This document shows, in pieces, positions 6,285-51,269 of a stretch of DNA of 64,000 nt. A model generated the notes under the pieces. The model ran no database searches and was not told the DNA's origin. It worked only from the letters and a program-made list of their open reading frames with translations. The stretch comes from Bigelowiella natans CCMP2755 (lineage: Eukaryota; Protista; Cercozoa). The translations under genes and the position numbers were made by a program. Where the stretch lies: the NCBI GenBank assembly GCA_000320545.1, contig ADNK01000875.1, forward strand, positions 248,001-312,000. Reading direction: 5' to 3'. How positions within the stretch are numbered: the first letter of the stretch is position 1; each line of letters begins with the position of its first letter.

Positions 6285-7191
6285 TTCTCGTCGGATTTCA
6301 ATTGAAAATGCTTGAATCAGTCAAAGGGATACAATCAATATAGGTTTCAGTTCAAGATTCTTGCCTGAACTCTCCCATCAAGTAAAATGTCTCACGTGAC
6401 ATTCTAGCAAGTCCCCCACCATGCAATCAACATTATGCTATCTAGGACGGAGGCATAATTTTCTATTTGTGTCACTCTTGTTTCACATTTATATCTTAGT
6501 GATACTTGTAATGCTTGTCATAGACAATGTGCATGTTGGTGTGCATATGGGAGACACATCTACGACTAGCAAGGTGCTTGTGGCACGTATCACATGCAGA
6601 GTGCACTGCAAAGCACCATAGGCCGTTGCATATACGTATGCGTGGACCATGCACACACGCGCGGTTAGTAGAAAGACTGTTGAATACTGCTACGGTGGAT
6701 CGCCGAGACGATGATACTACATGTCATGGCAAATGCAGCTGTCTAGCTGTGCTGGCAACTCTAGACTTGCATCAGCTGCTCAACGCTAATGCATGGCACA
6801 TGTTAGTGATATTTAGCGGTAAACAAGTCTTGTACAGATGCGCCCCCCCTGTGATATATGAAGATTCCAGCTGCGGACATTGCGATAATCGTTACCAAAA
6901 TTACGACTAGATGAATCTAAGCGCACATCGCTGTCAGCTGTGCATGTAGAAGCCATGTTGGAGCAGCACTGTCGCGATCGCATCAGTAGCTGCGAGCAAC
7001 CATGCTGACATACACATCTAGACATGGCACGGTCATGTTGCATCATATACTGCATACGTAGTTACATGTATGCCATAGATAGTATCGTATGGATTGACTA
7101 CGTGAACAATGTGCAACAGCGTCGATCGCTCAATAATAACATCATCAGGGCAATCTAGCAATACGATCATCTTGCACTCGCAAATGTACCA

Positions 7192-10100
7192 TCAGTTAGT
7201 CGAATTCGGCGTTGGGCTGAACTCAACGGAATGCAGAACCTGCCAATGGTGACGTGGCACTTCCACATGACCACACTCCTCTGCGAGACCCGCGAGAAGC
7301 TTTGGCATTTCGGCCTTTCCTCTAATTCTTGGTTGTGACTGATCCGTGAGCCCCACGAATAGTTCCATACCGGCAATATTAACTGGTGATACACTCTCTT
7401 TACCTTCTGCCATCAGATGCTGGTGTTTTTGGCCAAGAATGGACGTCTTAAAGCCAACCTCGGCGCGCTTGAGCACACGACAGGACACCCCGTGGCTTGG
7501 AAGATTTCGTAGCGCTGCACACACACGCTGGCTCTTGAGGGAAACGCTGCTGATGTTTAGCAGAAGGACGGGACCAAAAGAGTTGCTGGTTGTATTATCA
7601 TCGGTGATGCCTGTGCCATTCCTATTGGCGGTAGCGCTATTATTGTCGTAACTAGTTATATTCGTGTTGTGGTCGTCATTCTTGTCGCTGAGCCGGTTGT
7701 TGTATGTGCTGCTGCTGCTGCTGCTGCTGTAGATCGCGACGAGACGATCAAGCAAGCCGCAGATAAGACCCGTCCCCTTCCAGAACGACAATGGCTGCGG
7801 AGTGGTGGCCTTCTCTTCTCTTTTCTTTCTGCCTTCCCTCTCCCCATCCGCCTCATCGTCGATGCTGTCGACGTGTCTGCACTCCTCTTCGGTTGGGATA
7901 TAGGGGGGGTTACAGATGATAAGATCAAACGCACTGTATTGCTGCTCAAGGGCGCATCCAAGGCGCGGCCTTACGTTGCTCGGCATGGCGGCGTAAGGAG
8001 ATTTCATGAACGCGATGGCTTCTTTGCACGTGTCTAATGCTACAACTGTAGCAGAGGGCAGGGACAATGCAAGAGACTTGGCTAACCACCCAGACCCCGC
8101 CCCGACGTCGATGGCGCGCTGAAATATAAATCTGGATCCTCCTGCGTCATCTTCAGCTTCCTCGCCACCTCTTTCTCCCTTCAACATTGTACGGCCATAG
8201 CGAGAGCGAATAACGTTGGCCGTGATGAAGGTGTCTAGATTTGGCCGCATGAAGTGGCCACCCTGCTTGTAGAAGTCCATCTGCTCTGTCCAAAGATGAT
8301 GAGATGGTCGCGACGATGGCAGTAACGACGGCGTTGTTGGTGGTAGGAATTTTGAGGAAGGAAGTAGTAACGACTCCACGGGCGTTTTCATGGATGATGA
8401 CGATGATGATGATGATAATGATGATGATAATGATGATGAGGGTGGTGTGTGTAAGTGACTCTGCTGTCTTAGAGTGATGAAGTACTTTGCCTCCGCAGGA
8501 AGTCCATACCACCTGAAGCCGCCGATCACCGCCGGATGGGCAAGAGACCAGACCAGCTGCTTCGGATGTTTCTCCGGATCTTTTTTATCTACAAGATACT
8601 CCTGGGCGAGAACCACGTCGCCGGAAGCATTTGTTTCGCATACAACAGCAACTTTACGAGAGCTCTTGCCGCCGTCGTCTTGAAACAGGAGATTTTTCAT
8701 CTTCTCGATCATCGCGTCGACTCTGAGTTCTTGCTGCTTTGCCAGCACCAAAGCACGAGGCCAGTCCACCGTGCGCCCATCATCCGCAAAATAGCTAAAG
8801 TTCCTCCGAGACATTTGGTCAACGCGCGCTGCTACCCCCAGCTTGTGCATGTGAGGGAGTGAGCAGTTTATGTCGTTTGGGAAAAGCAGCGGCGGTGAAC
8901 TTCTGTTGTTCCTGGAGTTTCTTTTCATAACATCACCACCACCACCACCACCACTACTACTACTACTGCTGCTGCAGTTACTATCACGTTCACAACAGTT
9001 GCTATTAGTTTTCGCAACGATTTCCAGGATTCTCGTGCACAAGTCGTTGGCGATGAAGCGCACGTAGCTCTTGACTGTCCGAGCGTTCATTGTTCCTCCA
9101 ATCGATTCCGACGGGTTGTCCTGGAAAAGAAATTCGACGAAGGCCTCCTCCACATGCACAGCGCCACGCACTATTTCATGCACCGTTTGCGCACTGATAG
9201 AATCTCCCTGGGCGATTAGGCGTTTGAGAAGTGCGAGGGAAATGTTGACATGTTGTCCCTCGTCACGAGCAATCAGGTCATTCGATCCTACCAGCGATGG
9301 CAGCTGCTTTGCGTACTTTTCCTTATAGTAGTAGATGTACGCAAAAGCGGAAGAGAACATTATCCCTTCCACACAGGCGAAGGCCACTAACCTCTCCGCG
9401 CGGGTTCGGTTCCTGCGATTCATGAATCGCCGCACGAAGTTGATTTTCCTTCTAAACGCACACGCGCTGTTTGGGTAGTGTGTGTTGTTAGCCTCTCTGC
9501 TGGTAGGGTTGTCATTTCGAGCACCCTCCTCCTCTTCTCCCTCCACCTCCTCCTCACAGATATTAGTTGTCGCGCCAGTTTCACGAAACAGAATTTTTCT
9601 CTCCTCAGCATCTGGTACAAAGCTCTTCAGCAAGAGGCTGTACGTCAGGCTATGGACGACTTCCTGTGCATTTTGCAGCGCAAGAACTTGCGAGCACAGC
9701 TGACCACTGGCGTCGTCAAGATCGTCGAATTCAATGGTGAAGTTGTCTCTCAGGTTGCGCGAAACAACATTGTCCGCGAGCGCGAGAAAGGCCATGACGC
9801 GCACCAACACTGACCGTTCCAGCGGCGGTAAAATCTCGATGTTTTTCTGGTCGATCTCATAGGGAAATTCTGTTTGCGACCATGCTGCCTCTTGAAACCA
9901 CAGAACAAACTCGTACATCTCGCGGTCACCTGAGGGATCTACCAGGAGCTTACATAGGGGAGGAGACGGAGGAGAACGATGAGGAGGAGGAGGTGAAGGC
10001 GAGATTGGCGTCTTCTTCTTCCATGATGACGACGACGTCGATGATGATGATGATGATGATGATGATGATAACGATGATTCTACAGTCCTTTGTTGACTTT

Positions 10101-10946
10101 TAACATCGAGATCATACTGTTGTTGTCGGAGGAGAGAGGACGGGAGTAATCGGGCCTGACGAGGGGGGCGCATGCGCATGTAGTAGAGACCAGTCTTCAA
10201 ACCGGCACGATTGCAGAGGAGGTGGTAAGCTGCTAGAAAGGTGTTGTCAGGATGCTCTACGAAGTAGTTGAAGGACTCCGATTGGTCAATGAACCACGAC
10301 CGCACCTATGTTGGTATGCGCGCGTGTGTGTTTGCTTGCGTGTCAGTGTGCATTTTTACATAATACATGGGTAATATATGAATGATATTTGCAATAAAAT
10401 CTGGCACAAAAACGAATTTTAGAAGATAAATACGCAACAGCGTTGTGGCGAATGACAACGCTTTATCGATGGTTAAGGTAAGGTTAAAAGCTGAATAGTG
10501 AGCAATGGAATACCCATAATACATCGATCAAAACAACAACCTTGGAGTAAGCTACGGGTACATAGTCGGGGAGCTCCCATCCTGAAAATAGTGAAAGCGA
10601 TTTTCTTTTTTTGTGGATGAGGAGAAGAATGAATATTATTGACTCGTACCTGTGGGAAAGATGCCGCATAGCTCCCTCCAAAAGCTCTCTTCGGTGCTGT
10701 TCTTTTTATGTAAAAATCTACGGTAATCAATGCTGCGCAGAGAACCTCCAGACTCTTTCAGTTCTTTGGCTATATCGGCATTCCATAGGCCAACGGCACG
10801 CATGCGGGCGTGCATGTGGCGGTTTACTTGCCAGTATTGACCGAGGAAATCGCACCGAAGCTGCATATTGCTTTCGGGTAGCTCTGCACCTGCGGTATCC
10901 ATTGTATGTGTGTGTGTGTGTGTGTGCGTGTGGTAGGGATAGGAAA

Positions 10947-10987
<41 letters not shown>

Positions 10988-13900
10988 CGTAGAGTTTTGA
11001 TGCAGTTCTTTGAACCGTAATTTGAAGAATGGGAACGAAAAACACTAAATCACAGTCAGAGTGGCGGTAGCCCCTCCAGTCGGCCACAACGAATCGATGG
11101 TAAATATCAACATATTGGTTTGTTGCTGTGAACTATTTCGTCATGTATTTTGAGCCGTTACCAGAGCTGCAGCATCCGAAAACGTGCGACCAGAAAATGG
11201 AGGGGGGTTGGGCTGTGAGATGCGCGTTGTGTGTGCCGTGAAGCTCTAGCTTCGTGCGGACAGTCTCCCAATCGAGCCCAAAGCTGCCGTTGTCGTTCTC
11301 CTCACACCCTAAAATGCCCCTCGCACGGAATGCATTCATGCTGTTCTTGGCGACGTCAATCTCAGGATATGCTAGTTCGAATTGCAAAAACCTCTTTTTA
11401 ATCTTTTTCTTCTCCCTTTTTTGATGGTTGTGGTTGTCGTCTTCGCCTCCTCCAGCATTGATGGCCGCTGTTGCTGCCTGATCCAACGAACTGGACACTG
11501 CACCGAAGTAGAGATGCTCGTACAGTTTGCGGGCGAGTCTCAAGGCCGGAGTTGAGTCAAGAGAATGGCCAAACATCTGTAGCACATCGACCATGCCTTG
11601 CCCCCCAATCCCGAGGGAACTATTTTGGATATAATGTAAATCAATATCAGCATCGATTGCATATACTATCTTTCATTTTACACATCATTATTCATAATCC
11701 CTGTCGCCTTCTCCTCCTCCTTCTCCTCCTCCTCAGCTTTCTTTCTATCTTTCTGTATAACTCTATAATCAACTGACTAACCGATCCTTTGTCCCTTCGA
11801 ACGCTGCCAAGTTTTCAAACGTGCATGCCCCTGCAGTGACGAGGCAATCCCCCAAGCGTTGTGCCTCACGCGCCGCTCGAACAAGTCCATCCCAGTCTAC
11901 GTACGGTCCTGGATGTCCTGTCCAGTTGGCCCTTTGTGCTGTTTTCTCCCTTTTCCCCTTTGCTGCTAGTTTCACTTGAGGATCATCTCTGCCGCTGTCA
12001 TCATCGTCATCATTGTCGTTCTCCGTGGTGTGAGGGCTAAGTGTGCTTCGCTCATAGCGCACGAAGCTCGGAAAGCAGAGCGTCATGACCGTGCAAACGC
12101 TAGTCTCCGTTTCGTCAGAAAACTGAACGATTTCAGTGCACAGGTTGGAGCTTCGAATGGACGTCCCACGTTTTCTTTCCCTCTTTTTATTGTCTCGGAT
12201 ATCCCCCCTGCAATCGATGCTTGTTTTTCTTATCATATTCGCCCCTCTCCCCCCTTTGCTTCTAGCTGCACACGTCGTTGTTGTCGCCATCTTTGCTTTT
12301 TGGCTATCGTATTCTGTTTCCCCTGCCTCCGTTTCATCTTTTTTATCGTCGTCGTCATCATCTTCTTCATCATAGTTTACAATCACCGGAGATCTGCTGT
12401 TGATAGTGTCGCGATTAAGCATGTATGGTTCCCCCGTCTTGCGCTGCGAGCGAAGTATTGCGCCCATGATATCGCGTGCGCGGGTCCATTTCACAACTTT
12501 TCCCTCGGAGACAAGGCTGGCCATTTTTCTTCGGAAATCCGCCGTTGCCATGAGGGCGTGACTCTCGGCTGGGGAAAATAGCGGCCACTTGTCGTCCTCT
12601 TTCACTGCTTCGTAGAATGCATCAGGAATCTGAAAAGACGGCAGGGGGGAGGGGGGCCGAAGGGTTAAGGAAGCTACATGTCGATACGGTTTGGATGCAC
12701 CCCGAGAATGCGATACAAGAACGCGACGAAAAGCGTAGCACAAAAGAACAGCATTGAAATATGATGTGCAATACATAACAGGCAGGTGTGCCTTCACCAT
12801 AAGCGCAATATGATTATCCTTGGAGCTCTGTTCGATAGTAGGGTCCTTGAGCTTTAAGAACTCGAAAATGCCCTCGTGACTTGGATTCAAGTAGAAAGCC
12901 ATCGCTGGCTTACGGAAGCTCTTTTGCTGCTTTACACTTGAGCGTGCTACGGCCTCCAAGTATCTGAAAACATCACCGAGTTATGCCGAAACAGTCGTAT
13001 TTCATTCACATGTCATAAATGATACATGAAACACACCCACACCACACACATACTTGGCACCCCCGCAAAAGGAGCAAAAGAATATTCTGGCTAAACCTTG
13101 CGAGGGGAAGCATTTCTTCGGTCTCAACGCCATGAAATTGGATGCCATGGCCGCCATAGGGTAACTCCCCAAGATCGTTCAGCATCTTATGACCCTCACG
13201 ATTTCCCTGCGTAAAGCACGTAGAGAAATGACCATCAAGGCCTTTTCGCCCTGCATTCGCCATTAGTGGACTTGGAGGAGCAATCTTCTTCTGAGAAAAC
13301 AGCGTATACCAACTCTGTATCTGTGCTAAGCTTTTGTCATTCAGGATGAAGCTAGATGGTGTTCGCTGGGTCTCTGCTGCGTGAGCAGAAGAGGGTGATG
13401 AAGAAGATGACATGGAGGAGGAGGAGGAGGAGGAGGAGGCCCTGACCCTCCAGAGTTCCGCGGCTAATGAAGCGCGAAGATAGCTATACTGTGGCGTTTC
13501 AAGCAGCTCGTGGTAACTTCTCCCTTTCATATCATTCCCCATTGACATTTTTTTCGTCTTTGGTGCTCGCAGCGAGAACAGAGCGAGGGCGTGCATGCTA
13601 TAGATTCCGGGATACAGAAAGTCGCGCCCTGGGACGACCATGGCATCAAGTGCTTTTCGATTTCTCATGACTGTGGCATAGAAGGAGGAAGTCAGCTGGC
13701 TCTTCGCCGCCTCCATGGCTTCTGAGAATGATGGAGGTGCGCGTTGTTGGGTGCGCAGGGCGAACGAGCGAGCAGCCCATACACCTGATGATCATTCAGA
13801 TTTCACATGTGTATGGTGAGGGCGAGGTATAATGAAATTAGTATGGTTTTTAATTAGCCTGAAAAATGGACCGACCAGCTTCAGGGAAGAGCCAACTAAT

Positions 13901-14242
13901 GTTTTCAGCACGTTGCTCCATTGCGACCTTTTCTTCGTCGCCGCACTGAAGGCCTTTCGCGTCCAGAAGCCTTGTTTTGCCACCTATTGAGCATGAGAGG
14001 CATACTGGCTCTTTCAAATATCTCTGATTTTTAGATTTGCACTCTTCAGTTCCTTTACTGGAGGAAGAGGAGGAACTCATGATCTGCATGATGGCTTCCT
14101 TATCTACCCGAAGAGGCAATGATTCATGGCTGTTCGAATTGTTGCGGCAACTCTCTTTTATCACTTGCTGGATCCACGAGACCGCGGCAATGTCCTTCTT
14201 CGAGGAATGAGAGGGCAAGAGAGCCTCCTCCTCGAGCGCCAT
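7192..14242 (-). CDS. Single-chain class Ia ribonucleotide reductase R1-R2 fusion with C-terminal HemK/N6AMT1-like methyltransferase (~1,973 aa, 8 exons)
   Basis: Exons 14242-13876, 13784-13097, 12963-12798, 12629-11782, 11619-11162, 10889-10650, 10581-10541 and 10305-7192 are all GT-AG and phase-compatible, total 5922 nt. R1 motifs: FSTCF, TGEPYM, SSNLCTEI, SVCT, LGIGGQG, FIDQSES, GLKTGLYYMR. R2 motifs: ADNVV, QEVVHSLTY, VEGIMFSSAF, RDEGQH. Methyltransferase motifs: IDVGAGSG, DLIICNPPY. The R1 C-terminus, R2 and the methyltransferase lie in one stop-free ORF (7192-10305). Confidence 0.9.
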
Positions 14243-14609
14243 TGCTCTCAGCTCTCAGTTGATCAGCTATCGAATCAATGGACAGACGATGAACGTTATC
14301 GAATCTTACGAATGTGTGTTGTCGTCCATTTTCGTTGTCTTTCTTGTGAAATGACCTGTATATTATCCTTGTTTTTCCGATTATTCATTTACACCTTACG
14401 ACAACACAAATCCCCCATCCGAAGCACATTTCGCCTGGTAGCGTTCCTAATGATGGTTTCCATCTGCAATTCTTAGCTGCGACAACATAATATAATCCCG
14501 AGAACTGCGAAGCGAAAAAGAGTACGCTAGTCGGAGACGCTGAAGCTTCCGCTGAGGAGAAGAGATGCACACATGCACATGTGAACATGAATGTAAACAC
14601 ATGGATCTA

Positions 14610-15276
14610 CATGTACATGTGAGACGGATGTGATGAAGAATTGAATTTTTTCAATGGTCATCCTGATGTAGCTGTGCAATGCAGCGGCTACAGCGCTGAT
14701 GTTGCATCTGTTGGTTTCTGCCACGATGTGTTTCATGCACTTGAAAGCGTCCTCATGCGACCGATGTTGCCGCGCACTGCGCGCAGCAGTTCTGGAGTCC
14801 TTTTCAGCCTTTGTCAGCCGGTTCGTGTCGTCGTTGCGATTCATGATCGCGCGCATTTGATTGCGCAATCTGATTTGTTCTCGACTGTGTGTTGGACATT
14901 GCAGGAGATGATCCATGTCCTTCAGGATGCCACATGCATCGCACGTGGCATCTTCCTCTGTGCATTGTCCACGTGACAGCATGAATTTTCCAAGATTGCC
15001 GACACCACAGATGGCGCGCATCCATGATGTAGCAACACTTGGAAGTTTTAGTTTGATGCCGGTGATCGAAGATGACGGGAGGAATCCAAGATTCTTGAGA
15101 TGCACAGCGCGCAATGAATCATTGGACCATTCCTCTTCGAATTCGTTGAAAGCACATGATTTCATCACCTTGTGATGTTTTTTCAGTTCTTTTTTTAGCG
15201 CCTCTGTTGTCGCCAAAACGGTGGGCAATTCGTCATCCAACAAGTCGTCAGTGATCGATTTGAGCTGACGAAACAA
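14610..15276 (-). mobile_element. Non-LTR retrotransposon (LINE) 3' fragment, copy A, TpA-depleted
   Basis: Encodes a C-terminal CCHC knuckle (CDAC...DMDHLLQC) typical of LINE ORF2 ends. Clearly homologous to 35696-36060 (both share SAVAAALHSYIRMTIEKI). Confidence 0.7.
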
Positions 15277-46826: not shown

Positions 46827-49800
46827 CTAAGCGGACGTGGGGCCGACAAGGCGAGGGAGCTTGTAAGGTAGAGTCTTTGTAGTTATTTTTCTTTTTCTGG
46901 TGCCTTGTAGCATGATGGTTAGTTTTTCTCTGTATGATATAGGGAACAAGAAATCACAGTGTTTCTTGTTGCTAGGTCCTGGTAGAGCCTTAGTAAGTAT
47001 ATCAGCGGGATTGTCCTCCCCAGGTATTTTGTTTATGCAGATCTGCTTAGTTTGATAGTTATCACGAACATTGTGATATTCTATCCTTATGTTCTTGCCT
47101 TTTTGTGTGAATCCAGGCTTGGCTGCAATGGAGATAGCTGCTTGAGAGTCACAATACACAGGTACAGGTTTCGGTATCTTCATCTTTAACTCCTGTAGTA
47201 ACTGAGTGACATACACTAACTCTCTGCATATATCTGATAGTGCTATGTACTCAGCCTCGCCACTGGACATAGCAACGACCTTTTGCTTGTTGCTCTTCCA
47301 GACAACAGGTGCGTTGCTTAGCGATATGAAATATCCTGAGTATGATTTACCCGTTTTCTTGCAGGTTTTCCAGGAGGCATCGACGTAAGCTTTAAGCTCA
47401 GGTTTGGACGCTGCTTTAAAGGTAATTCTTTTATCCTTTGTATTGACCAGATACTGCAGTAAGCGTACTGCAGCGATGTAGTGTATAGTTCTAGGATCTT
47501 GACTGTAGGAAGCTAGACGAGATAGAGTGTAGCATATGTCTGGTCTAGTAGCCACAGCTGCATACATTGCAGCTCCTATGATGGATCTGTATGCCTTTTG
47601 ATCCACCTTATCATGCTCCTCGTATTCGTCTAACTTCGATCCTGTTATCATTGGTGTTTTTGCTCTTTTCGTAGGCGTGATATCATACTTCTGGGCGAGT
47701 CTGGTGAGGTAGTCTTCCTGCGATATCCAATAGTTTCCCTCATTGTCGCTACCAACTCTTATGCCCAGTGTTTTCTTTAGCTCGCCTTCATCGCGAAACT
47801 CAAACTTGTCGCCTATTCGCTTCATGACAAAGTCCAGGTCTCTCTTATCTTGATATGCTATGCATATGTCATCCACGAAACATGACAATATGATGATTCT
47901 TCCTTGTCTGTGCATTATCATTAGGCAAGGATCGGAATAAAGCTGGACGAAGCCAATGGCGTTGAGATGCTCGAGCAAGGTAAGGCTGAATATTGCACTT
48001 GCTTGTGTCAGCCCATAAATGCTTTTGTTTACCAGTAGGGCTAGTGGAAGGCCACTGTTGTATAGCCGGATTTCCTCAGGTGTCTTCGGCTTCCACCCTT
48101 TAGGTATTTCCATGTGTACTTTACAGTCCATCTTTCCAGTTAGGAAAGCTGTAAGTATATCTATCCCGTGTAGTTTTAGCTTGAGGATAGATGCTATGGC
48201 TAACATTATCCGAAAACTATTTAGGGACAACGTCGGGGAATAAGAGAAGAAGAAGTCTTCTCCCGGGATCTGCGTGAACCCTCGCGCGACCAGCCTTGAC
48301 TTATACCGAATGGTATAGTCTACATTTATTTTCTTCTTGAATACCCATTTAGATGTAACGAAATTTGTATCCTTAGGTCGCACTACCAGCGTAAACGTTC
48401 CAAGTTTTCGAAGCTGGTGCAGTTCCTCTTCCGTAGAAGGTATCCAATGCTTCTTATCATCTCCTGTGATTGCATCGTCATACGTCTTAGGAAGGTCCTC
48501 GATCTCTTGTACTGATGGAGCTTTTATGTTCATCAGGCGGTCGTAATAGCTACCAAGTATTCCGTAACGAATACCAGGTACTCCCCTATTTTCTCTATTC
48601 GACCTTCGAGGTTTACTTTTTGCTTTTGTTTCAGGCCCACCATCCTCTGGCAACTCGTCAGTTGCACTGGATGGTTCGGGGGCGTCCGCGTCGGCAGGAC
48701 CTTCTGGATAAAGGTACGCCAAAGCCGAATCACTAACTTTGTTTCTCTTCAGCGAAGGAAACTTAAACACTGTGTGGTACCATTTAGTTACACGGACTCT
48801 TCTAATTTTCAGCGTCTTCGTGGCGACGAGAAAAGTACCAAATCTATCGTCATATCCCAACATACGTACGTATTCACCTCTAGCACCCATACCACCTGCA
48901 GGTCGGAGTTCCTTGTCGATGTGGTTTACTCCGATGCATCCCCAGGTAGTTAGATTCTTTAGATTTGGTTGCTCATGGTGCAGTAGTTCTTTAGGCGTTT
49001 TTCTACCAGGTGTGCTGCGATGTGAGGTGACGTTGTGGAGATATGCTGCAGTCTGAGCTGCGTAGGACCAGTATCCGACCGGTAAGCGTGCATGTTCTAA
49101 CATAGCTCTTGTTTTCGCCATGATAGTCTGTATGTGACGCTCGGACATTCCATTTTGCTCAGGTGTTCGGGCGGTGCTAGGAACCCATTTTATTCCTTCG
49201 GAGGTGAGCCAGCTATGTAGCTTTGCGCTCATATATTCACCTCCACCATCCGATCTGAATTCGTCTATGCTTCCACAACCTGGAAGCTTTCTGATGTGCT
49301 TTAGGAACTGTATGGTTTTCTGCGTAACTTCGCTTTTCTTTCTCATAAGCTCCAAGGTAACCCACCTTGTTCCTTCATGTACGAATATTACGAAATACTT
49401 GTAACCATCCATGCTGTTAGGCATGGTCTTTACATCAGAGTGAATTCTATTCCACATCCGGTTTTTCTTGTGGATAACAGGTACACATTTTTGCTTCTTT
49501 TTGACAGCATCGTCCTCAATCTTTGCTTTATTCCGATGCTGTTTCATCCTTTCTTGGGCGCTTGGATCAAAGATCGGAGATCTTTTTGTTTTGGCTACAT
49601 CACAGGCCTTGCAAAAGATCTTCTTTGGTATTTTTATCGTCTTGGAATAAGGTAAACCTTCTGTAACTGCATAGGTGTCTCTTATCTTATCCGCTGCGAT
49701 GTGCCCTAGGATGTTATGTGCGTGCTTGATTGAAGATGGCTGTTTCATTGGGTAGGATTTAAATCTTTGTGTTTTTGTACTTTTGTTTATTTGTTTATAT

Positions 49801-51269
49801 CTCAAATAAAATAGGCCGTCGTCTTGAAAGTCCCCGAACGCGTATTCCTCTCCGTTGGCGGTAATGCTTATTCCTTGTTTTGTTCCTTTGTACTCGCTGC
49901 CACTCTTAACTAGTCTGTTTAGAGAAATCACATTGCCTGCAGCTTCTTCAGAGTACAAAGCTCCTTGTAGAACAATTTTATGCATCTTTCCTTGCTTGTT
50001 TTTCGTAGTTAGTTCGACGTCGCCTGCATAATCCACAAAGAATCCTGTCCCATCTTTGCCAACTTCTATGTATCGTGGTTGAATAGGTTTCAACTCGTTG
50101 AAGAAGTCGCGGTCGCAGAAGAAGTGGTTGTTGGCTCCGCTGTCGAGAAGGATCAAAGGCTTATGGTTGTACTTCAGCGTGTGCAGGTAAGAATTGTCGC
50201 GTGCCATCTTATTAATGTAAGAGGGTCTTTGGGAAGGGGAGCCATGATCTATAAAAGAATAGTGTTTTCCTTTGTTCTGCTTGCCTTCGTCTCTCATCTT
50301 GTTTCTGCATTCCTTTTCCCAATGTCCTTTCTTGCCACAGTAATGGCATTTTGTTCTTTTCTTTAAGTTCAAGAAATAGTCTTCTCTCTTTTGCTTCTTG
50401 GAATTGTCTTGATATGCTTCGCTGTTGTATCTGTTCTTTCCTTTGTTGAATTTCCTCTTGTAGGTCTTCAGCTGACCCGTAAGTTCATTTAGCCTTTTCT
50501 CCAAGCCATCGTACATCTTCACGTATTTGTGTTCTGCACTGGTGTGTCCTGCATGTTTCTTTGAAGGTTTCTGCCCGTCATCTAACGATCGGGAGTTCAT
50601 GTGGGAGCGGATCATGTCCACTGCAGAGTCGAAGGTAAAATCTTTCTTGTTGTTAATGACTGTTACTATAGTCTCGTATTTTTCTCTAGGTACAAGTCCT
50701 CGAAGTAGAGTGGTAAGAGCTTGATTGTCGGAGTATCCTTCGTGCTGTGCTCGAAGTCTTCTGATCGTCGAGTCAAGGTCAGAATGATACTTCGTGAAGT
50801 CTCCATTGTACTGACCCATGTTTATATCACTTAGCTTCGAATAAAGTTTCCTGACGGCTACAGGATTGGTAGGCTCGTACTTCTCCAGCAAGGCTGCTAA
50901 GGTAACTGCTACGTCTTTGGGTTTTCCTTCGAGTAGATCGAAGAATTTATCAGGAAGGGTAGCAGTGAGGAAGAATCTTCCTCTCTTTCTTTTGTTTATC
51001 TTTTCTTGTGATCCTCTTCCTTCGGGTTTAGGGTTGAGGATGTCGAATTGCTCCTGAGAGAGCTTGAGTACTTCTCGTCGGTGAGCGGGGTCGGTGCGTA
51101 CATTGACTTCTGTCACCTTTCCTTCTGTTTCTATGTTGACATTGAAGCATGATTCCAAATCCGCTGCTTCAAAGGCGGACATTAGCTTGTACATGTAGGG
51201 CTTGTAGTTGCTACCATCGTACTTGAGGGTGAAGTTTTTCAGCAGGGAGTCTATCTGCTTTTCTGACAT
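46827..51269 (-). CDS. Copia gag-pol polyprotein (1480 aa)
   Basis: Zn knuckle CHYCGKKGHWEKEC, protease LLDSGA, integrase (HNILGH..CKAC, IHSD, RSDGGGEY, NGMSER), RT (KSRLVARGF, KSIYGL, FVDD) and RNase H (YVDASW, EAEY, CDSQAA, ADILTK), in Copia order with integrase before RT. Confidence 0.98.
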   Translation of the reverse strand: MSEKQIDSLLKNFTLKYDGSNYKPYMYKLMSAFEAADLESCFNVNIETEGKVTEVNVRTDPAHRREVLKLSQEQFDILNPKPEGRGSQEKINKRKRGRFFLTATLPDKFFDLLEGKPKDVAVTLAALLEKYEPTNPVAVRKLYSKLSDINMGQYNGDFTKYHSDLDSTIRRLRAQHEGYSDNQALTTLLRGLVPREKYETIVTVINNKKDFTFDSAVDMIRSHMNSRSLDDGQKPSKKHAGHTSAEHKYVKMYDGLEKRLNELTGQLKTYKRKFNKGKNRYNSEAYQDNSKKQKREDYFLNLKKRTKCHYCGKKGHWEKECRNKMRDEGKQNKGKHYSFIDHGSPSQRPSYINKMARDNSYLHTLKYNHKPLILLDSGANNHFFCDRDFFNELKPIQPRYIEVGKDGTGFFVDYAGDVELTTKNKQGKMHKIVLQGALYSEEAAGNVISLNRLVKSGSEYKGTKQGISITANGEEYAFGDFQDDGLFYLRYKQINKSTKTQRFKSYPMKQPSSIKHAHNILGHIAADKIRDTYAVTEGLPYSKTIKIPKKIFCKACDVAKTKRSPIFDPSAQERMKQHRNKAKIEDDAVKKKQKCVPVIHKKNRMWNRIHSDVKTMPNSMDGYKYFVIFVHEGTRWVTLELMRKKSEVTQKTIQFLKHIRKLPGCGSIDEFRSDGGGEYMSAKLHSWLTSEGIKWVPSTARTPEQNGMSERHIQTIMAKTRAMLEHARLPVGYWSYAAQTAAYLHNVTSHRSTPGRKTPKELLHHEQPNLKNLTTWGCIGVNHIDKELRPAGGMGARGEYVRMLGYDDRFGTFLVATKTLKIRRVRVTKWYHTVFKFPSLKRNKVSDSALAYLYPEGPADADAPEPSSATDELPEDGGPETKAKSKPRRSNRENRGVPGIRYGILGSYYDRLMNIKAPSVQEIEDLPKTYDDAITGDDKKHWIPSTEEELHQLRKLGTFTLVVRPKDTNFVTSKWVFKKKINVDYTIRYKSRLVARGFTQIPGEDFFFSYSPTLSLNSFRIMLAIASILKLKLHGIDILTAFLTGKMDCKVHMEIPKGWKPKTPEEIRLYNSGLPLALLVNKSIYGLTQASAIFSLTLLEHLNAIGFVQLYSDPCLMIMHRQGRIIILSCFVDDICIAYQDKRDLDFVMKRIGDKFEFRDEGELKKTLGIRVGSDNEGNYWISQEDYLTRLAQKYDITPTKRAKTPMITGSKLDEYEEHDKVDQKAYRSIIGAAMYAAVATRPDICYTLSRLASYSQDPRTIHYIAAVRLLQYLVNTKDKRITFKAASKPELKAYVDASWKTCKKTGKSYSGYFISLSNAPVVWKSNKQKVVAMSSGEAEYIALSDICRELVYVTQLLQELKMKIPKPVPVYCDSQAAISIAAKPGFTQKGKNIRIEYHNVRDNYQTKQICINKIPGEDNPADILTKALPGPSNKKHCDFLFPISYREKLTIMLQGTRKRKITTKTLPYKLPRLVGPTSA

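What the first reader, a model, noticed from the sequence alone, without database searches (positions are those of the whole stretch)
7192..14242. Single-polypeptide ribonucleotide reductase: R1 + R2 + SAM-dependent methyltransferase
Seen: the R1 C-terminal motifs (FIDQSES, GLKTGLYYMR), a Ser/Pro linker, a complete ferritin-like R2 and an NPPY methyltransferase share one uninterrupted 1037-codon ORF. Seven upstream phase-compatible exons supply the rest of R1. Established: class Ia RNRs normally use separate alpha and beta genes. Here all the chemistry is retained: thiyl-radical NLCTE, partner cysteines (FSTCF, SVCT), relay YY, di-iron ligands (D, ExxH, E, ExxH), the radical Tyr four residues after the first His, and a beta-tail Tyr (RRNFSY). 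Inference: a self-contained, highly divergent radical enzyme coupled to methylation, possibly making a modified (deoxy)nucleotide or nucleoside product rather than bulk dNTPs. I know of no described R1-R2-methyltransferase protein, but cannot search to confirm novelty.
Basis: partly seen in the sequence, partly recalled or inferred. Interest (0 to 1): 0.95.

Follow-up and report, generated by a model that had tools for sequence, protein, structure and literature searches.

The report
Fused ribonucleotide reductase with added methyltransferase
A marine protist expresses one spliced gene whose single reading frame joins both subunits of the enzyme that makes DNA building blocks to a methyltransferase. 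The two-subunit fusion belongs to a little-noticed natural family also found in bacteria, giant viruses and other protists, which could help in studying how the two subunits work together.

Summary
The minus-strand frame 7192-10305 (1037 codons) holds the end of RNR R1, a Ser/Pro linker, a complete R2 and an NPPY methyltransferase. Spliced RNA contigs from three studies join the upstream R1 exons to it in frame. The resulting model has 8 exons and 1912 aa, and 3'-tag reads pile up only just after the stop codon.

R1+R2 in one protein is not unique. I found nine other distinct fused proteins: on three bacterial contigs (one reading TGA as Gly), on a giant-virus contig, in a EukProt transcript and on contigs of unknown origin. 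An Amoebophrya genome also carries a colinear gene. In the R1 tree all fused proteins separate from canonical R1. The window gene pairs with Amoebophrya and sits next to the bacterial members.

The fused proteins lack the ATP-cone and specificity loop 1. Nearly all end in terminal cysteines (CxxC in five). The window protein has no terminal Cys pair and carries the methyltransferase instead. That domain is HemK2/Mtq2/PrmC-like, and its nearest relatives are stand-alone bacterial proteins. No other fused member has it, so coupling to nucleotide methylation is unsupported.

I found no paper on natural class I alpha-beta fusions. Verdict: new variant of a known kind. The scan had already noted this same stretch (s1-767813, s1-767891, s1-767913).

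The parts
14059..14242 (-). Predicted first coding exon (ATG at 14242). The donor at 14058 is the best of several possible donors.
   Evidence: Frame-compatible GT..AG enumeration. An RNA contig extends 1171 nt upstream of 12900. The junction was not seen in reads.
13097..13784 (-). Exon 2: R1 N-terminal all-alpha region and the first active-site Cys (FSTCF). Boundaries are predicted.
   Evidence: Pfam Ribonuc_red_lgN. tblastn with fused homologues reaches E 1e-25. Splice enumeration.
12798..12963 (-). Exon 3 (R1 barrel start). The acceptor is predicted and the donor comes from RNA.
   Evidence: Joint 12629/12798 in contigs of 3 runs.
11782..12629 (-). Exon 4: R1 barrel with the thiyl-radical loop SSNLCTEIVQ and the second redox Cys (SVCT), plus long acidic and low-complexity inserts.
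   Evidence: Joints. Aligned to human and yeast R1 structures. Alignment.
11162..11619 (-). Exon 5: R1 barrel, including the altered phosphate-loop motif QPPSIFWSHVFG.
   Evidence: Joints. Pfam Ribonuc_red_lgC. Alignment.
10650..10889 (-). Exon 6 (R1).
   Evidence: Record 16 of run X3 and the joints.
10541..10581 (-). Exon 7, a 41-nt micro-exon (R1).
   Evidence: Joints 10303/10539 and 10580/10649 in 3 runs. It keeps the frame.
10171..10305 (-). Start of exon 8: R1 C-terminus with FIDQSES and the YY radical relay in GLKTGLYYMR.
9919..10170 (-). Alpha-beta linker, about 85 aa, Ser/Pro-rich. It includes a (TCA)n repeat at 10009-10081.
   Evidence: No stop in this frame, against 2 and 4 stops in the other two frames. 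RNA contigs enter the repeat from both sides.
8788..9918 (-). R2 (ferritin-like) domain: Trp of the relay (AAWSQ), iron ligands, radical Tyr (QEVVHSLTY), a low-complexity insert containing NCCERDSNC, and the tail Tyr (RRNFSYF).
   Evidence: Pfam 148 bits. Mouse and human R2 structures match at E 1e-29..
8281..8787 (-). Post-tail segment: a predicted helix (8686-8766), a short beta region and a Ser-rich repeat (8388-8448). No family matches it.
   Evidence: No Pfam or NCBIfam match. Low-confidence model. A similar helix follows the tail Tyr in Amoebophrya.
7195..8280 (-). HemK/MTS-like SAM methyltransferase domain (GAGSG at 8086-8109, NPPY at 7900-7911) carrying host-type low-complexity inserts.
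   Evidence: Pfam MTS. NCBIfam PrmC and HemK hits fall below their cut-offs. End-to-end alignment to bacterial P0099, P0111 and P0140. Best fold matches are HEMK2, Mtq2 and PrmC.
7032..7194 (-). Stop codon (7192-7194) and 3' UTR. The transcript ends at about 7030-7100.
   Evidence: RNA contigs end at 7032, 7080 and 7191. 3'-biased RNA reads pile up at 7101-7300.

Best explanation
This is a single-copy nuclear gene with introns that is expressed. It encodes a 1912-aa member of a distinct clade of naturally fused class I ribonucleotide reductases, in which alpha (R1) is followed by a flexible linker and beta (R2). In this lineage a bacterial-type HemK/Mtq2-like SAM methyltransferase has been added at the C-terminus, where relatives carry their terminal cysteines.

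Shown: the frame, the splicing, the single 3' end, the family membership and the retention of every radical and catalytic residue.

Inferred: the beta domain assembles a di-iron tyrosyl radical and passes it (Trp, tail Tyr, YY) to the thiyl Cys of an alpha domain, in cis or across a dimer, so that ribonucleotides are reduced without a separately supplied partner subunit. The enzyme lacks an ATP-cone and specificity loop 1, so it probably escapes the usual dATP and effector control. Having no terminal Cys pair, it must be re-reduced in another way.

Inferred more weakly: the methyltransferase N-methylates a protein amide or amine (Gln or Lys), on the enzyme itself or on a partner, rather than a nucleotide. 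It is a lineage-specific add-on and not part of the reductase chemistry.
For: 1. One frame across the whole gene. RNA-derived joints give an open frame from 12980 to the stop at 7192, and the full model has 1912 aa with no stop.
2. Transcript continuity. Contigs from three studies are colinear over 7032-10303 and break only inside three trinucleotide repeats, which they enter from both sides.
3. Single 3' end. The 3'-biased reads of X22 pile up at 7101-7500; over 7501-11300 the RNA strand has no reads, with only traces elsewhere (0.5 or less against 8.3).
4. Gene model. P0151 (EukProt, 908 aa) reads R2 through the methyltransferase as one protein.
5. Family. Pfam finds R1+R2 in P0002, P0004, P0005, P0006, P0008, P0033 and P0045, and the precomputed domains of P0157 and P0276 show the same. 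Their contexts are bacterial, giant-virus and a recoded bacterium.
6. Amoebophrya has a colinear gene in which a 930-aa ORF joins the R1 end to R2.
7. Trees. In the R1 tree fused and canonical sequences split at 100*, and the window gene pairs with Amoebophrya at 96*. In the R2 tree the window gene sits in a 99* set with P0014, P0002, P0004, P0006 and P0157.
8. The catalytic residues are kept in both eukaryotic copies.
9. Ordinary nuclear setting: single copy, beside eIF3c, a kinase and a copia element.
10. Methyltransferase identity.
Against: - No protein-level evidence exists, and no single read or contig spans the whole 6 kb.
- Contig depth rises toward the 3' end (about 4-fold in X1, 1.5 to 2-fold in X3 and X12). 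This could be 3' bias or could reflect extra internal transcription starts.
- The R1 part is very divergent. Its best six-frame Pfam exon match is 78 bits, against 740 for the canonical R1.
- It lacks loop 1, the ATP-cone and the terminal Cys pair, so normal multi-turnover reductase activity is not assured.
- The methyltransferase scores below every curated family cut-off.
- The structural model is poor outside the Rossmann core (mean pLDDT 44.6), and HemK2 stands only about 1.5 Z above generic methyltransferases.
Confidence: 0.6

Rival explanations
1. One reading: the reductase and the methyltransferase act in sequence on one small molecule and make an N-methylated (deoxy)nucleotide or nucleoside instead of bulk dNTPs.
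For: The two are covalently fused in one frame. NPPY methyltransferases also include enzymes that methylate exocyclic amines of bases; TrmN, RsmC and METTL5 appear among the fold matches. The phosphate-binding loop of R1 is altered to QPPxVxWSRIFG in this subclade, and loop 1 is missing, which would fit a narrowed substrate range.
Against: The altered loop and the loop 1 deletion are shared by fused relatives that have no methyltransferase, so they are not tied to methylation. The best sequence and fold matches are protein glutamine methyltransferases. The nearest relatives are stand-alone bacterial proteins (P0099, P0111, P0140), one of them on a contig where no RNR domain was annotated among its neighbours. 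The Amoebophrya counterpart lacks the domain. I know of no HemK-type enzyme that acts on free nucleotides (own knowledge).
Confidence: 0.1
2. One locus but several proteins: internal promoters, internal initiation (Met130, Met676) or cleavage in the low-complexity linkers yield separate R1, R2 and methyltransferase products, so the fusion exists only at the mRNA level.
For: Contig depth increases toward the 3' end. Database entries begin at Met130 (P0151) and Met676 (P0001). The linkers are long and disordered.
Against: Both database entries are explained by ORF calling from the first Met. P0001 comes from a 1.6-kb contig, consistent with a break at the Ser repeat. The linkers stay open in frame against odds of 1e-5. 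R1-R2 fusion is conserved across bacteria, viruses and two eukaryotic lineages, which argues that the fused polypeptide is the functional unit.
Confidence: 0.15
3. A relic or repurposed paralogue that no longer works as a reductase. The canonical R1/R2 and a class II RNR supply dNTPs, and this protein has another role (regulatory, scaffolding or other radical chemistry).
For: Extreme divergence, loss of the ATP-cone, loop 1 and the terminal Cys pair, and many low-complexity inserts. Canonical RNR genes are present, and an earlier scan note reports a class II RNR.
Against: All radical-relay, iron-binding and active-site residues are retained here and in the roughly 35%-identical Amoebophrya gene. 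The 1912-codon frame is intact, and the gene is spliced and expressed in three studies.
Confidence: 0.13
4. Assembly chimera or bacterial contamination joining unrelated genes.
For: The nearest relatives of both modules include bacterial sequences.
Against: The gene has spliceosomal introns and host-type Ser and Asn runs inside both modules. It lies in a contig of at least 312 kb among eukaryotic genes. RNA contigs from three independent studies match the genome with 0-1 differences.
Confidence: 0.02

Closest known systems
Canonical eukaryotic-type class Ia RNR (R1/RRM1 plus R2/RRM2; NrdAe/NrdBe)
   Same: The same two folds and the same chemistry residues: thiyl Cys loop NLCTE, redox Cys pair, YY, di-iron ligands, radical Tyr, relay Trp and tail Tyr.
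   Different: Here there is one polypeptide, no ATP-cone, a deletion of 12-14 residues at specificity loop 1, an altered phosphate loop and no terminal Cys pair. In the R1 tree it is separated from canonical R1 by a 100* branch of length 1.09.
Unnamed fused R1-R2 proteins in public data (P0002, P0157, P0004, P0006/P0153, P0005, P0276, P0008, P0033, P0045, and Amoebophrya P0014). JGI names one of them 'ribonucleotide reductase alpha subunit/ribonucleotide reductase beta subunit family'.
   Same: The alpha-linker-beta order, the loop 1 deletion, the lack of an ATP-cone and the shared motifs APPSP, TCFTQ and QPPxVxWSRIFG. The window gene clusters with them in both trees.
   Different: Nearly all of them end in terminal cysteines (CxxC in five, CX5C or CC in two, a single near-terminal Cys in two). 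The window protein ends instead in about 160 aa plus a 360-aa methyltransferase and has many low-complexity inserts.
Eukaryotic class III NrdD-NrdG fusion (Lundin et al. 2010, cited in PMC3267527)
   Same: The catalytic subunit and its radical generator are joined in one reading frame in eukaryotes.
   Different: A different RNR class (glycyl radical with a radical-SAM activase, anaerobic). The activase acts catalytically and is not a stoichiometric radical reservoir.
Other add-ons and engineered fusions: Facklamia ignava Grx-ATP-cone-NrdB (PMC6187632) and the engineered nrdA-nrdB(C35) photoRNR chimera (PMC11067019)
   Same: Accessory or partner functions are tethered covalently to an RNR subunit. 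The engineered chimera shows that a beta tail fused to alpha can deliver a radical.
   Different: The Facklamia protein fuses a reductant and a regulator to beta, not alpha to beta. The chimera is artificial and carries only 35 beta residues.
HemK2/N6AMT1-Mtq2 and PrmC protein N5-glutamine methyltransferases
   Same: MTS-type Rossmann fold, a GxGxG SAM motif and an NPPY catalytic motif. Best fold matches are 6ped_A (Z 13.4), 3q87_B (Z 12.9) and 2b3t_A (Z 11.9). Best NCBIfam hits are PrmC and HemK.
   Different: It scores far below the family cut-offs (54 against 199 bits; 31 against 87). Its closest relatives are bacterial proteins of 417-463 aa with hydrophobic N-termini and unknown function. 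No substrate is known.

Membership tests
Class I RNR catalytic subunit (R1/NrdA) | Ribonuc_red_lgC barrel and the lgN all-alpha domain | tested here: met
   Pfam gives 110.7 and 35.1 bits on two exon ORFs; lgN scores 23.3, below its cut-off of 28. Six-frame hits.
Class I RNR catalytic subunit (R1/NrdA) | Finger-loop Asn-x-Cys-x-Glu with the thiyl Cys, the two redox cysteines and the YY relay | tested here: met
   SSNLCTEIVQ, FSTCF, SVCT and GLKTGLYYMR align with human and yeast R1 and with the genome's own canonical R1.
Class I RNR catalytic subunit (R1/NrdA) | C-terminal Cys pair that re-reduces the active site | tested here: not met
   There is no CxxC or CX4C anywhere in the model after R2. 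Only a CC...C lies inside a low-complexity insert.
Class Ia regulation | ATP-cone and specificity-site loop 1 | tested here: not met
   PF03477 is absent here and in all fused relatives scanned. There is a gap of 12-14 residues opposite canonical IRATGSYIRGTGGQSNG.
Class Ia radical subunit (R2/NrdB) | Ferritin-like domain above the Pfam cut-off, Asp/Glu/His iron ligands and the radical Tyr | tested here: met
   PF00268 scores 148.4 bits against 33.6. D in LALADNVV, ExxH plus Y in QEVVHSLTY, E in CVEGIMF and ExxH in RDEGQH.
Class Ia radical subunit (R2/NrdB) | Relay Trp and C-terminal tail Tyr | tested here: met
   AAWSQ and RRNFSYF align with the canonical and fused homologues.
Class Ia radical subunit (R2/NrdB) | Tyrosyl radical formation and NDP reduction | not testable with these tools
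   Needs EPR and an activity assay.
Natural fused alpha-beta class I RNR clade (unnamed) | R1 and R2 in one frame, and R1 clustering with other fused proteins apart from canonical R1 | tested here: met
   The R1 tree shows a 100* split, with 96* for the pairing with Amoebophrya. The R2 tree shows a 99* set.
Natural fused alpha-beta class I RNR clade (unnamed) | Terminal cysteines after the beta tail | tested here: not met
   Present in all nine distinct relatives in some form. Absent from the window protein and from the predicted end of the Amoebophrya gene.
HemK/PrmC/Mtq2 N5-glutamine methyltransferases | SAM-binding GxGxG motif and NPPY catalytic motif on an MTS fold | tested here: met
   DVGAGSGW and NPPY. 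PF05175 scores 34.8 against 23. The fold matches HEMK2, Mtq2 and PrmC at Z 11.9-13.4.
HemK/PrmC/Mtq2 N5-glutamine methyltransferases | Score above the curated family cut-offs (equivalog level) | tested here: not met
   TIGR03534 scores 54.2 against 199.1, TIGR00536 42.1 against 115.5 and TIGR00537 31.1 against 87.
HemK/PrmC/Mtq2 N5-glutamine methyltransferases | Methylation of the GGQ glutamine of a release factor (with Trm112 for Mtq2) | not testable with these tools
   Needs biochemistry. Other HemK-like loci exist in the genome (C3154, C3267, C3197).

The most novel reading that the evidence does not exclude
A naturally tethered alpha-beta class I RNR lineage, apparently undescribed in the literature, spans bacteria (including a TGA=Gly lineage), giant viruses and at least two protist groups. 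In it one C-terminal tail carries both the radical-relay Tyr and the reducing cysteines. In this alga that tail has been replaced by a HemK-like methyltransferase which modifies the enzyme or its partner, so that dNTP synthesis becomes responsive to SAM.
Probability: 0.2. Interest if true: 0.85.

Novelty: new variant of a known kind. Interest (0 to 1): 0.68.

Why it matters
The active alpha2beta2 complex of class I RNR is transient, and its 32 Å (PMC11067019) radical transfer has been hard to study. Researchers have built artificial alpha-beta fusions to hold it together (PMC11067019). A natural family in which the two subunits are covalently linked, have no ATP-cone, and carry the relay Tyr and the reducing cysteines on the same tail offers ready-made material for structural and mechanistic work. 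It also raises the question of how balanced dNTP pools are made without loop 1.

Its scattered distribution (bacteria, giant viruses, a chlorarachniophyte-like alga and Amoebophrya) points to horizontal transfer of a self-contained dNTP factory. The extra methyltransferase is, as far as these databases show, a one-off. It may reveal a new regulatory modification of RNR, or it may simply be a neighbour-gene fusion.

Tried and rejected
1. Alternative splicing at the R1/R2 junction. The loose ends at 9968 and 9993 in run X1 map to one other locus (C1408) that shares a CCT-rich word. None of the four loose-end sequences occurs in the window.
2. Separate methyltransferase gene. P0001 (361 aa) comes from a 1.6-kb contig that most likely ends in the Ser repeat just upstream, and it starts at the first Met.
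3. The search for homologous proteins. The search with P0004 was swamped by canonical R1 and added only P0157. The search with the R2 region added only P0276. The search with the methyltransferase found only itself.
4. Two scans of the bacterial and archaeal genome collection. P0157 gave nothing. The R2 alignment A2 gave 61 loci, of which I checked 44: all carry stand-alone R2 (at most 34% identity) and none has an open frame long enough for a fusion with R1. No named bacterium with the fusion was therefore identified.
5. ESM Atlas on the methyltransferase returned only generic MTS clusters.
6. The AlphaFold model of the C-terminal 569 aa was confident only in the Rossmann core, so the segment between R2 and the methyltransferase stays unassigned.
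7. Exon 2 alone found no PDB relative.
8. Six literature searches and two targeted readings found no natural class I alpha-beta fusion.
9. No paralogue of the fused gene or of its methyltransferase exists elsewhere in the genome.


Full report
OBSERVATION.
The minus-strand ORF 7192..10305 is 1037 aa long. Read from its N-terminus it contains, in order:
- the last R1 motifs, FIDQSES and GLKTGLYYMR;
- a Ser/Pro linker of about 85 aa;
- a ferritin-like R2 domain (Pfam PF00268, 148 bits against a cut-off of 33.6; mouse and human R2 structures match at E about 1e-29);
- a stretch of about 160 aa with no family match;
- an MTS-type methyltransferase with GAGSG and NPPY (PF05175, 34.8 bits against 23).
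Upstream ORFs on the same strand carry Ribonuc_red_lgC and lgN.

Chance does not explain the open frame. Shuffles of the 3.1 kb give a longest open frame of 135 codons on average and 263 at most. The spacers have no stop in the coding frame but 2-16 stops in the other two frames.

TRANSCRIPT EVIDENCE.
Logan contigs of three runs from three studies (X1, X3, X12) carry joints that read GT..AG on the minus strand, so these runs are RNA. After adjusting each joint to GT..AG, the introns are 12630-12797, 11620-11781, 10890-11161, 10582-10649 and 10306-10540. One 3118-nt contig (record 16 of X3) links all these exons down to 10082.

Joining the exons gives one open frame from 12980 to the stop at 7192. 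Two further junctions (13096/12964 and 14058/13785) are predictions from GT..AG, reading frame and homology.

Within 7032-10303 the contigs are colinear with the genome. They break only inside three trinucleotide repeats (8388-8448, 8922-8983, 10009-10081). Flanking contigs extend 33-46 nt into each repeat from both sides, which is what a 31-mer assembler produces on such repeats. The 3'-biased raw RNA reads of X22 pile up at 7101-7300, just after the stop. They show nothing near the R1/R2 or R2/MTase junctions.

Apparent loose ends at 9968 and 9993 belong to another locus (C1408) that shares a short CCT-rich word.

P0151 (908 aa, EukProt) reads R2 through the methyltransferase as one protein starting at Met130. 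P0001 (361 aa) comes from a 1.6-kb contig that most likely breaks at the Ser repeat.

Caveats: no single molecule spans the gene, and contig depth rises toward the 3' end (4-fold in X1, less in X3 and X12). Additional internal transcription starts therefore cannot be excluded.

HANDLING OF THE SPLICED MODEL.
Exons were searched by reference. The joined translation was built only inside scripts from window.fa, for the frame check, local alignments (including a local tblastn against the fetched locus L034) and trees.

GENOMIC SETTING.
The window is C2862:248001-312000 of a 91.4-Mb assembly in 3736 contigs. Neighbouring genes are eukaryotic: eIF3c, a SP-RING/MYND protein, a kinase and a Ty1/copia element.

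The genome also has other RNR genes:
- a canonical R1 on C1202 (740 bits, ending in a CxxC tail);
- an intron-bearing R2 on C3191;
- R2 fragments on C3239;
- about ten identical AT-rich intronless R2 copies, each beside an integrase-like ORF.
Earlier scan notes describe the genome as a marine alga with virophage-like insertions, a redoxin-R2 fusion and a class II RNR. My guess that it is a chlorarachniophyte such as Bigelowiella is inference only. The fused gene and its methyltransferase are single copy.

THE R1-R2 FUSION IS A FAMILY.
A full HMMER scan of 1.84 billion representative proteins placed long proteins among the best R2 matches. Pfam shows R1 (lgN + lgC) followed by R2 in P0002, P0004, P0005, P0006, P0008, P0033 and P0045. 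P0157 and P0276 show the same architecture.

Their contexts are as follows:
- P0153 (same cluster as P0006) and P0157 lie on bacterial contigs, beside RecJ, RelA/SpoT and GlnE.
- P0002 has 36 in-frame TGA codons, several at positions where relatives have conserved Gly, on a 31% GC contig. This fits genetic code 25.
- P0008 lies on a 331-kb contig with DUF5764, DUF5765 and a polX-ligase fusion, which is typical of giant viruses.
- P0276 is a complete Trinity ORF in EukProt.
- P0014 lies in GCA_905178165.1, an accession cited with its sister GCA_905178155 in a paper on Amoebophrya genomes. At that locus R1-like exons and R2 are colinear over 6.6 kb, and a 930-aa ORF runs from the R1 end through a 430-aa linker into R2.

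TREES.
In the R1 tree all eleven fused sequences separate from canonical R1 (the genome's own R1, a tapeworm R1 and Bacteroidota R1) at 100*. The window gene pairs with Amoebophrya at 96* and sits with P0004, P0002, P0157 and P0006 at 98*. The EukProt and giant-virus members form the other subgroup (quick LG+G4 tree, so the stars carry less weight than in a careful search).

In the R2 tree the window domain falls in a 99* set with P0014, P0002, P0004, P0006 and P0157. The second subgroup is nested among ordinary R2 sequences there, so a single origin of the fusion is likely but not proven.

SHARED FEATURES OF THE FAMILY.
- There is no ATP-cone.
- A gap of 12-14 residues replaces specificity loop 1.
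- The motifs APPSP and TCFTQ are shared.
- In the window's subgroup the phosphate loop PTASTSQILG is replaced by QPPxVxWSRIFG.
- The thiyl loop, both redox cysteines, YY, the relay Trp, the iron ligands, the radical Tyr and the tail Tyr are all retained. This holds in the window protein and in the Amoebophrya copy, which is about 35% identical.
- The cysteines that normally end R1 sit at the very end of the fused proteins, after the beta tail. Five end in CxxC, P0004 in CX5C, P0033 in CC, and P0005 and P0276 in a single near-terminal Cys.
- The window protein has none of these. After the tail Tyr come a predicted helix, a short beta region, a Ser run and then the methyltransferase. The predicted Amoebophrya end also lacks cysteines.

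THE METHYLTRANSFERASE.
Residues 676-1037 of the ORF align end to end with three stand-alone proteins of 417-463 aa (P0099, P0111, P0140). Identity is 40-47% in the core and 29-32% overall. These proteins have hydrophobic N-termini, and one lies beside dnaA and yidC on a bacterial contig.

NCBIfam ranks PrmC, HemK and HemK2/Mtq2 first, but all fall far below their cut-offs. The AlphaFold model is confident only in the Rossmann core. Its best solved-structure matches are HEMK2-TRMT112 (Z 13.4, 173 aa aligned), Mtq2 (Z 12.9) and PrmC (Z 11.9), only slightly above generic methyltransferases at about Z 11.

No other fused RNR carries this domain, and none lies within 10 kb downstream in Amoebophrya. 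The genome has other HemK-like loci, so this domain need not be the release-factor enzyme.

INTERPRETATION.
Shown:
- one spliced mRNA with one frame encoding alpha-linker-beta-methyltransferase;
- membership of a distinct fused RNR clade;
- conservation of the radical machinery.

Inferred:
- It acts as a self-contained class I reductase, with the radical passing from the beta domain to an alpha domain in cis or in trans.
- It has lost the usual allosteric controls.
- Lacking the terminal cysteines, it needs a different route of re-reduction. A CC...C in a flexible insert before the tail Tyr is a candidate, but it is not conserved in Amoebophrya.
- The methyltransferase is most simply a lineage-specific addition of a bacterial-type HemK-like enzyme acting on a protein amide or amine. 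Nothing links it to nucleotide methylation.

LITERATURE.
Searches found engineered alpha-beta chimeras (PMC11067019), a Grx-ATP-cone-NrdB fusion (PMC6187632) and the eukaryotic NrdD-NrdG fusion (PMC3267527). They found no natural class I alpha-beta fusion. The 2022 family-wide RNR phylogeny (PMC9531940) contains none of the words fusion, fused or chimera. The library covers open-access papers only, so a prior description cannot be excluded. JGI's automatic name for P0153 shows that the architecture has at least been machine-annotated.

VERDICT.
R1+R2 in one chain is a new member of an existing but apparently undescribed family. The added methyltransferase and the loss of the terminal cysteines make this gene a new variant. 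Interest 0.68.

Noticed in passing
G000 contigs C1997, C3609, C140, C200, C631, C796, C1475, C1612, C2835, C175 (loci L001-L008): About ten near-identical copies (263.6-263.8 bits) of an AT-rich, intronless R2 gene. In L001 it lies beside an ORF that looks like an integrase by eye. This fits the scan's earlier virophage notes.
   Followed up: partly
L022:563-4111 (P0002): This fused RNR gene has 36 in-frame TGA codons. Several fall where relatives have conserved Gly (for example EGIMF and GLKTG), on a 31% GC contig. It is probably a genetic code 25 bacterium whose protein was mistranslated with Trp.
   Followed up: partly
P0002, P0157, P0006, P0008, P0045 C-termini: In fused RNRs the CxxC that normally ends R1 sits after the R2 tail. 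One tail therefore carries both the radical-relay Tyr and the reducing cysteines.
   Followed up: partly
window 11162-11619 (motif in the model at aa 765) and homologues: The substrate-phosphate loop PTASTSQILG of canonical R1 is replaced by a conserved QPPxVxWSRIFG in the window's subgroup, which includes Amoebophrya. This may indicate different phosphate recognition.
   Followed up: no
L034:8300-8600 (Amoebophrya locus): A tandem duplicated unit (translated RLPHSRI..RVTENVFLKISSSN) sits between the last R1 exon and the R2-bearing ORF. It looks like an intron-borne repeat.
   Followed up: no
G000:C2303:31778-35716: R1-like fragments containing several TGA, TAG and TAA stops. They may be a decayed R1 copy.
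   Followed up: no
window 46827-51269 (-): An intact 1480-aa Ty1/copia polyprotein ORF (gag, integrase, RVT_2).
   Followed up: no
L050 and L056 (Kuenenia and Nitrosomonadales MAGs): The R2 genes lie in open frames of 883 and 910 aa, much longer than usual. The extra part was not examined.
   Followed up: no
window 14530-15276 (-): A 249-aa ORF with no Pfam match lies directly upstream of the gene. The scan noted this repeat elsewhere as hypermutated.
   Followed up: no
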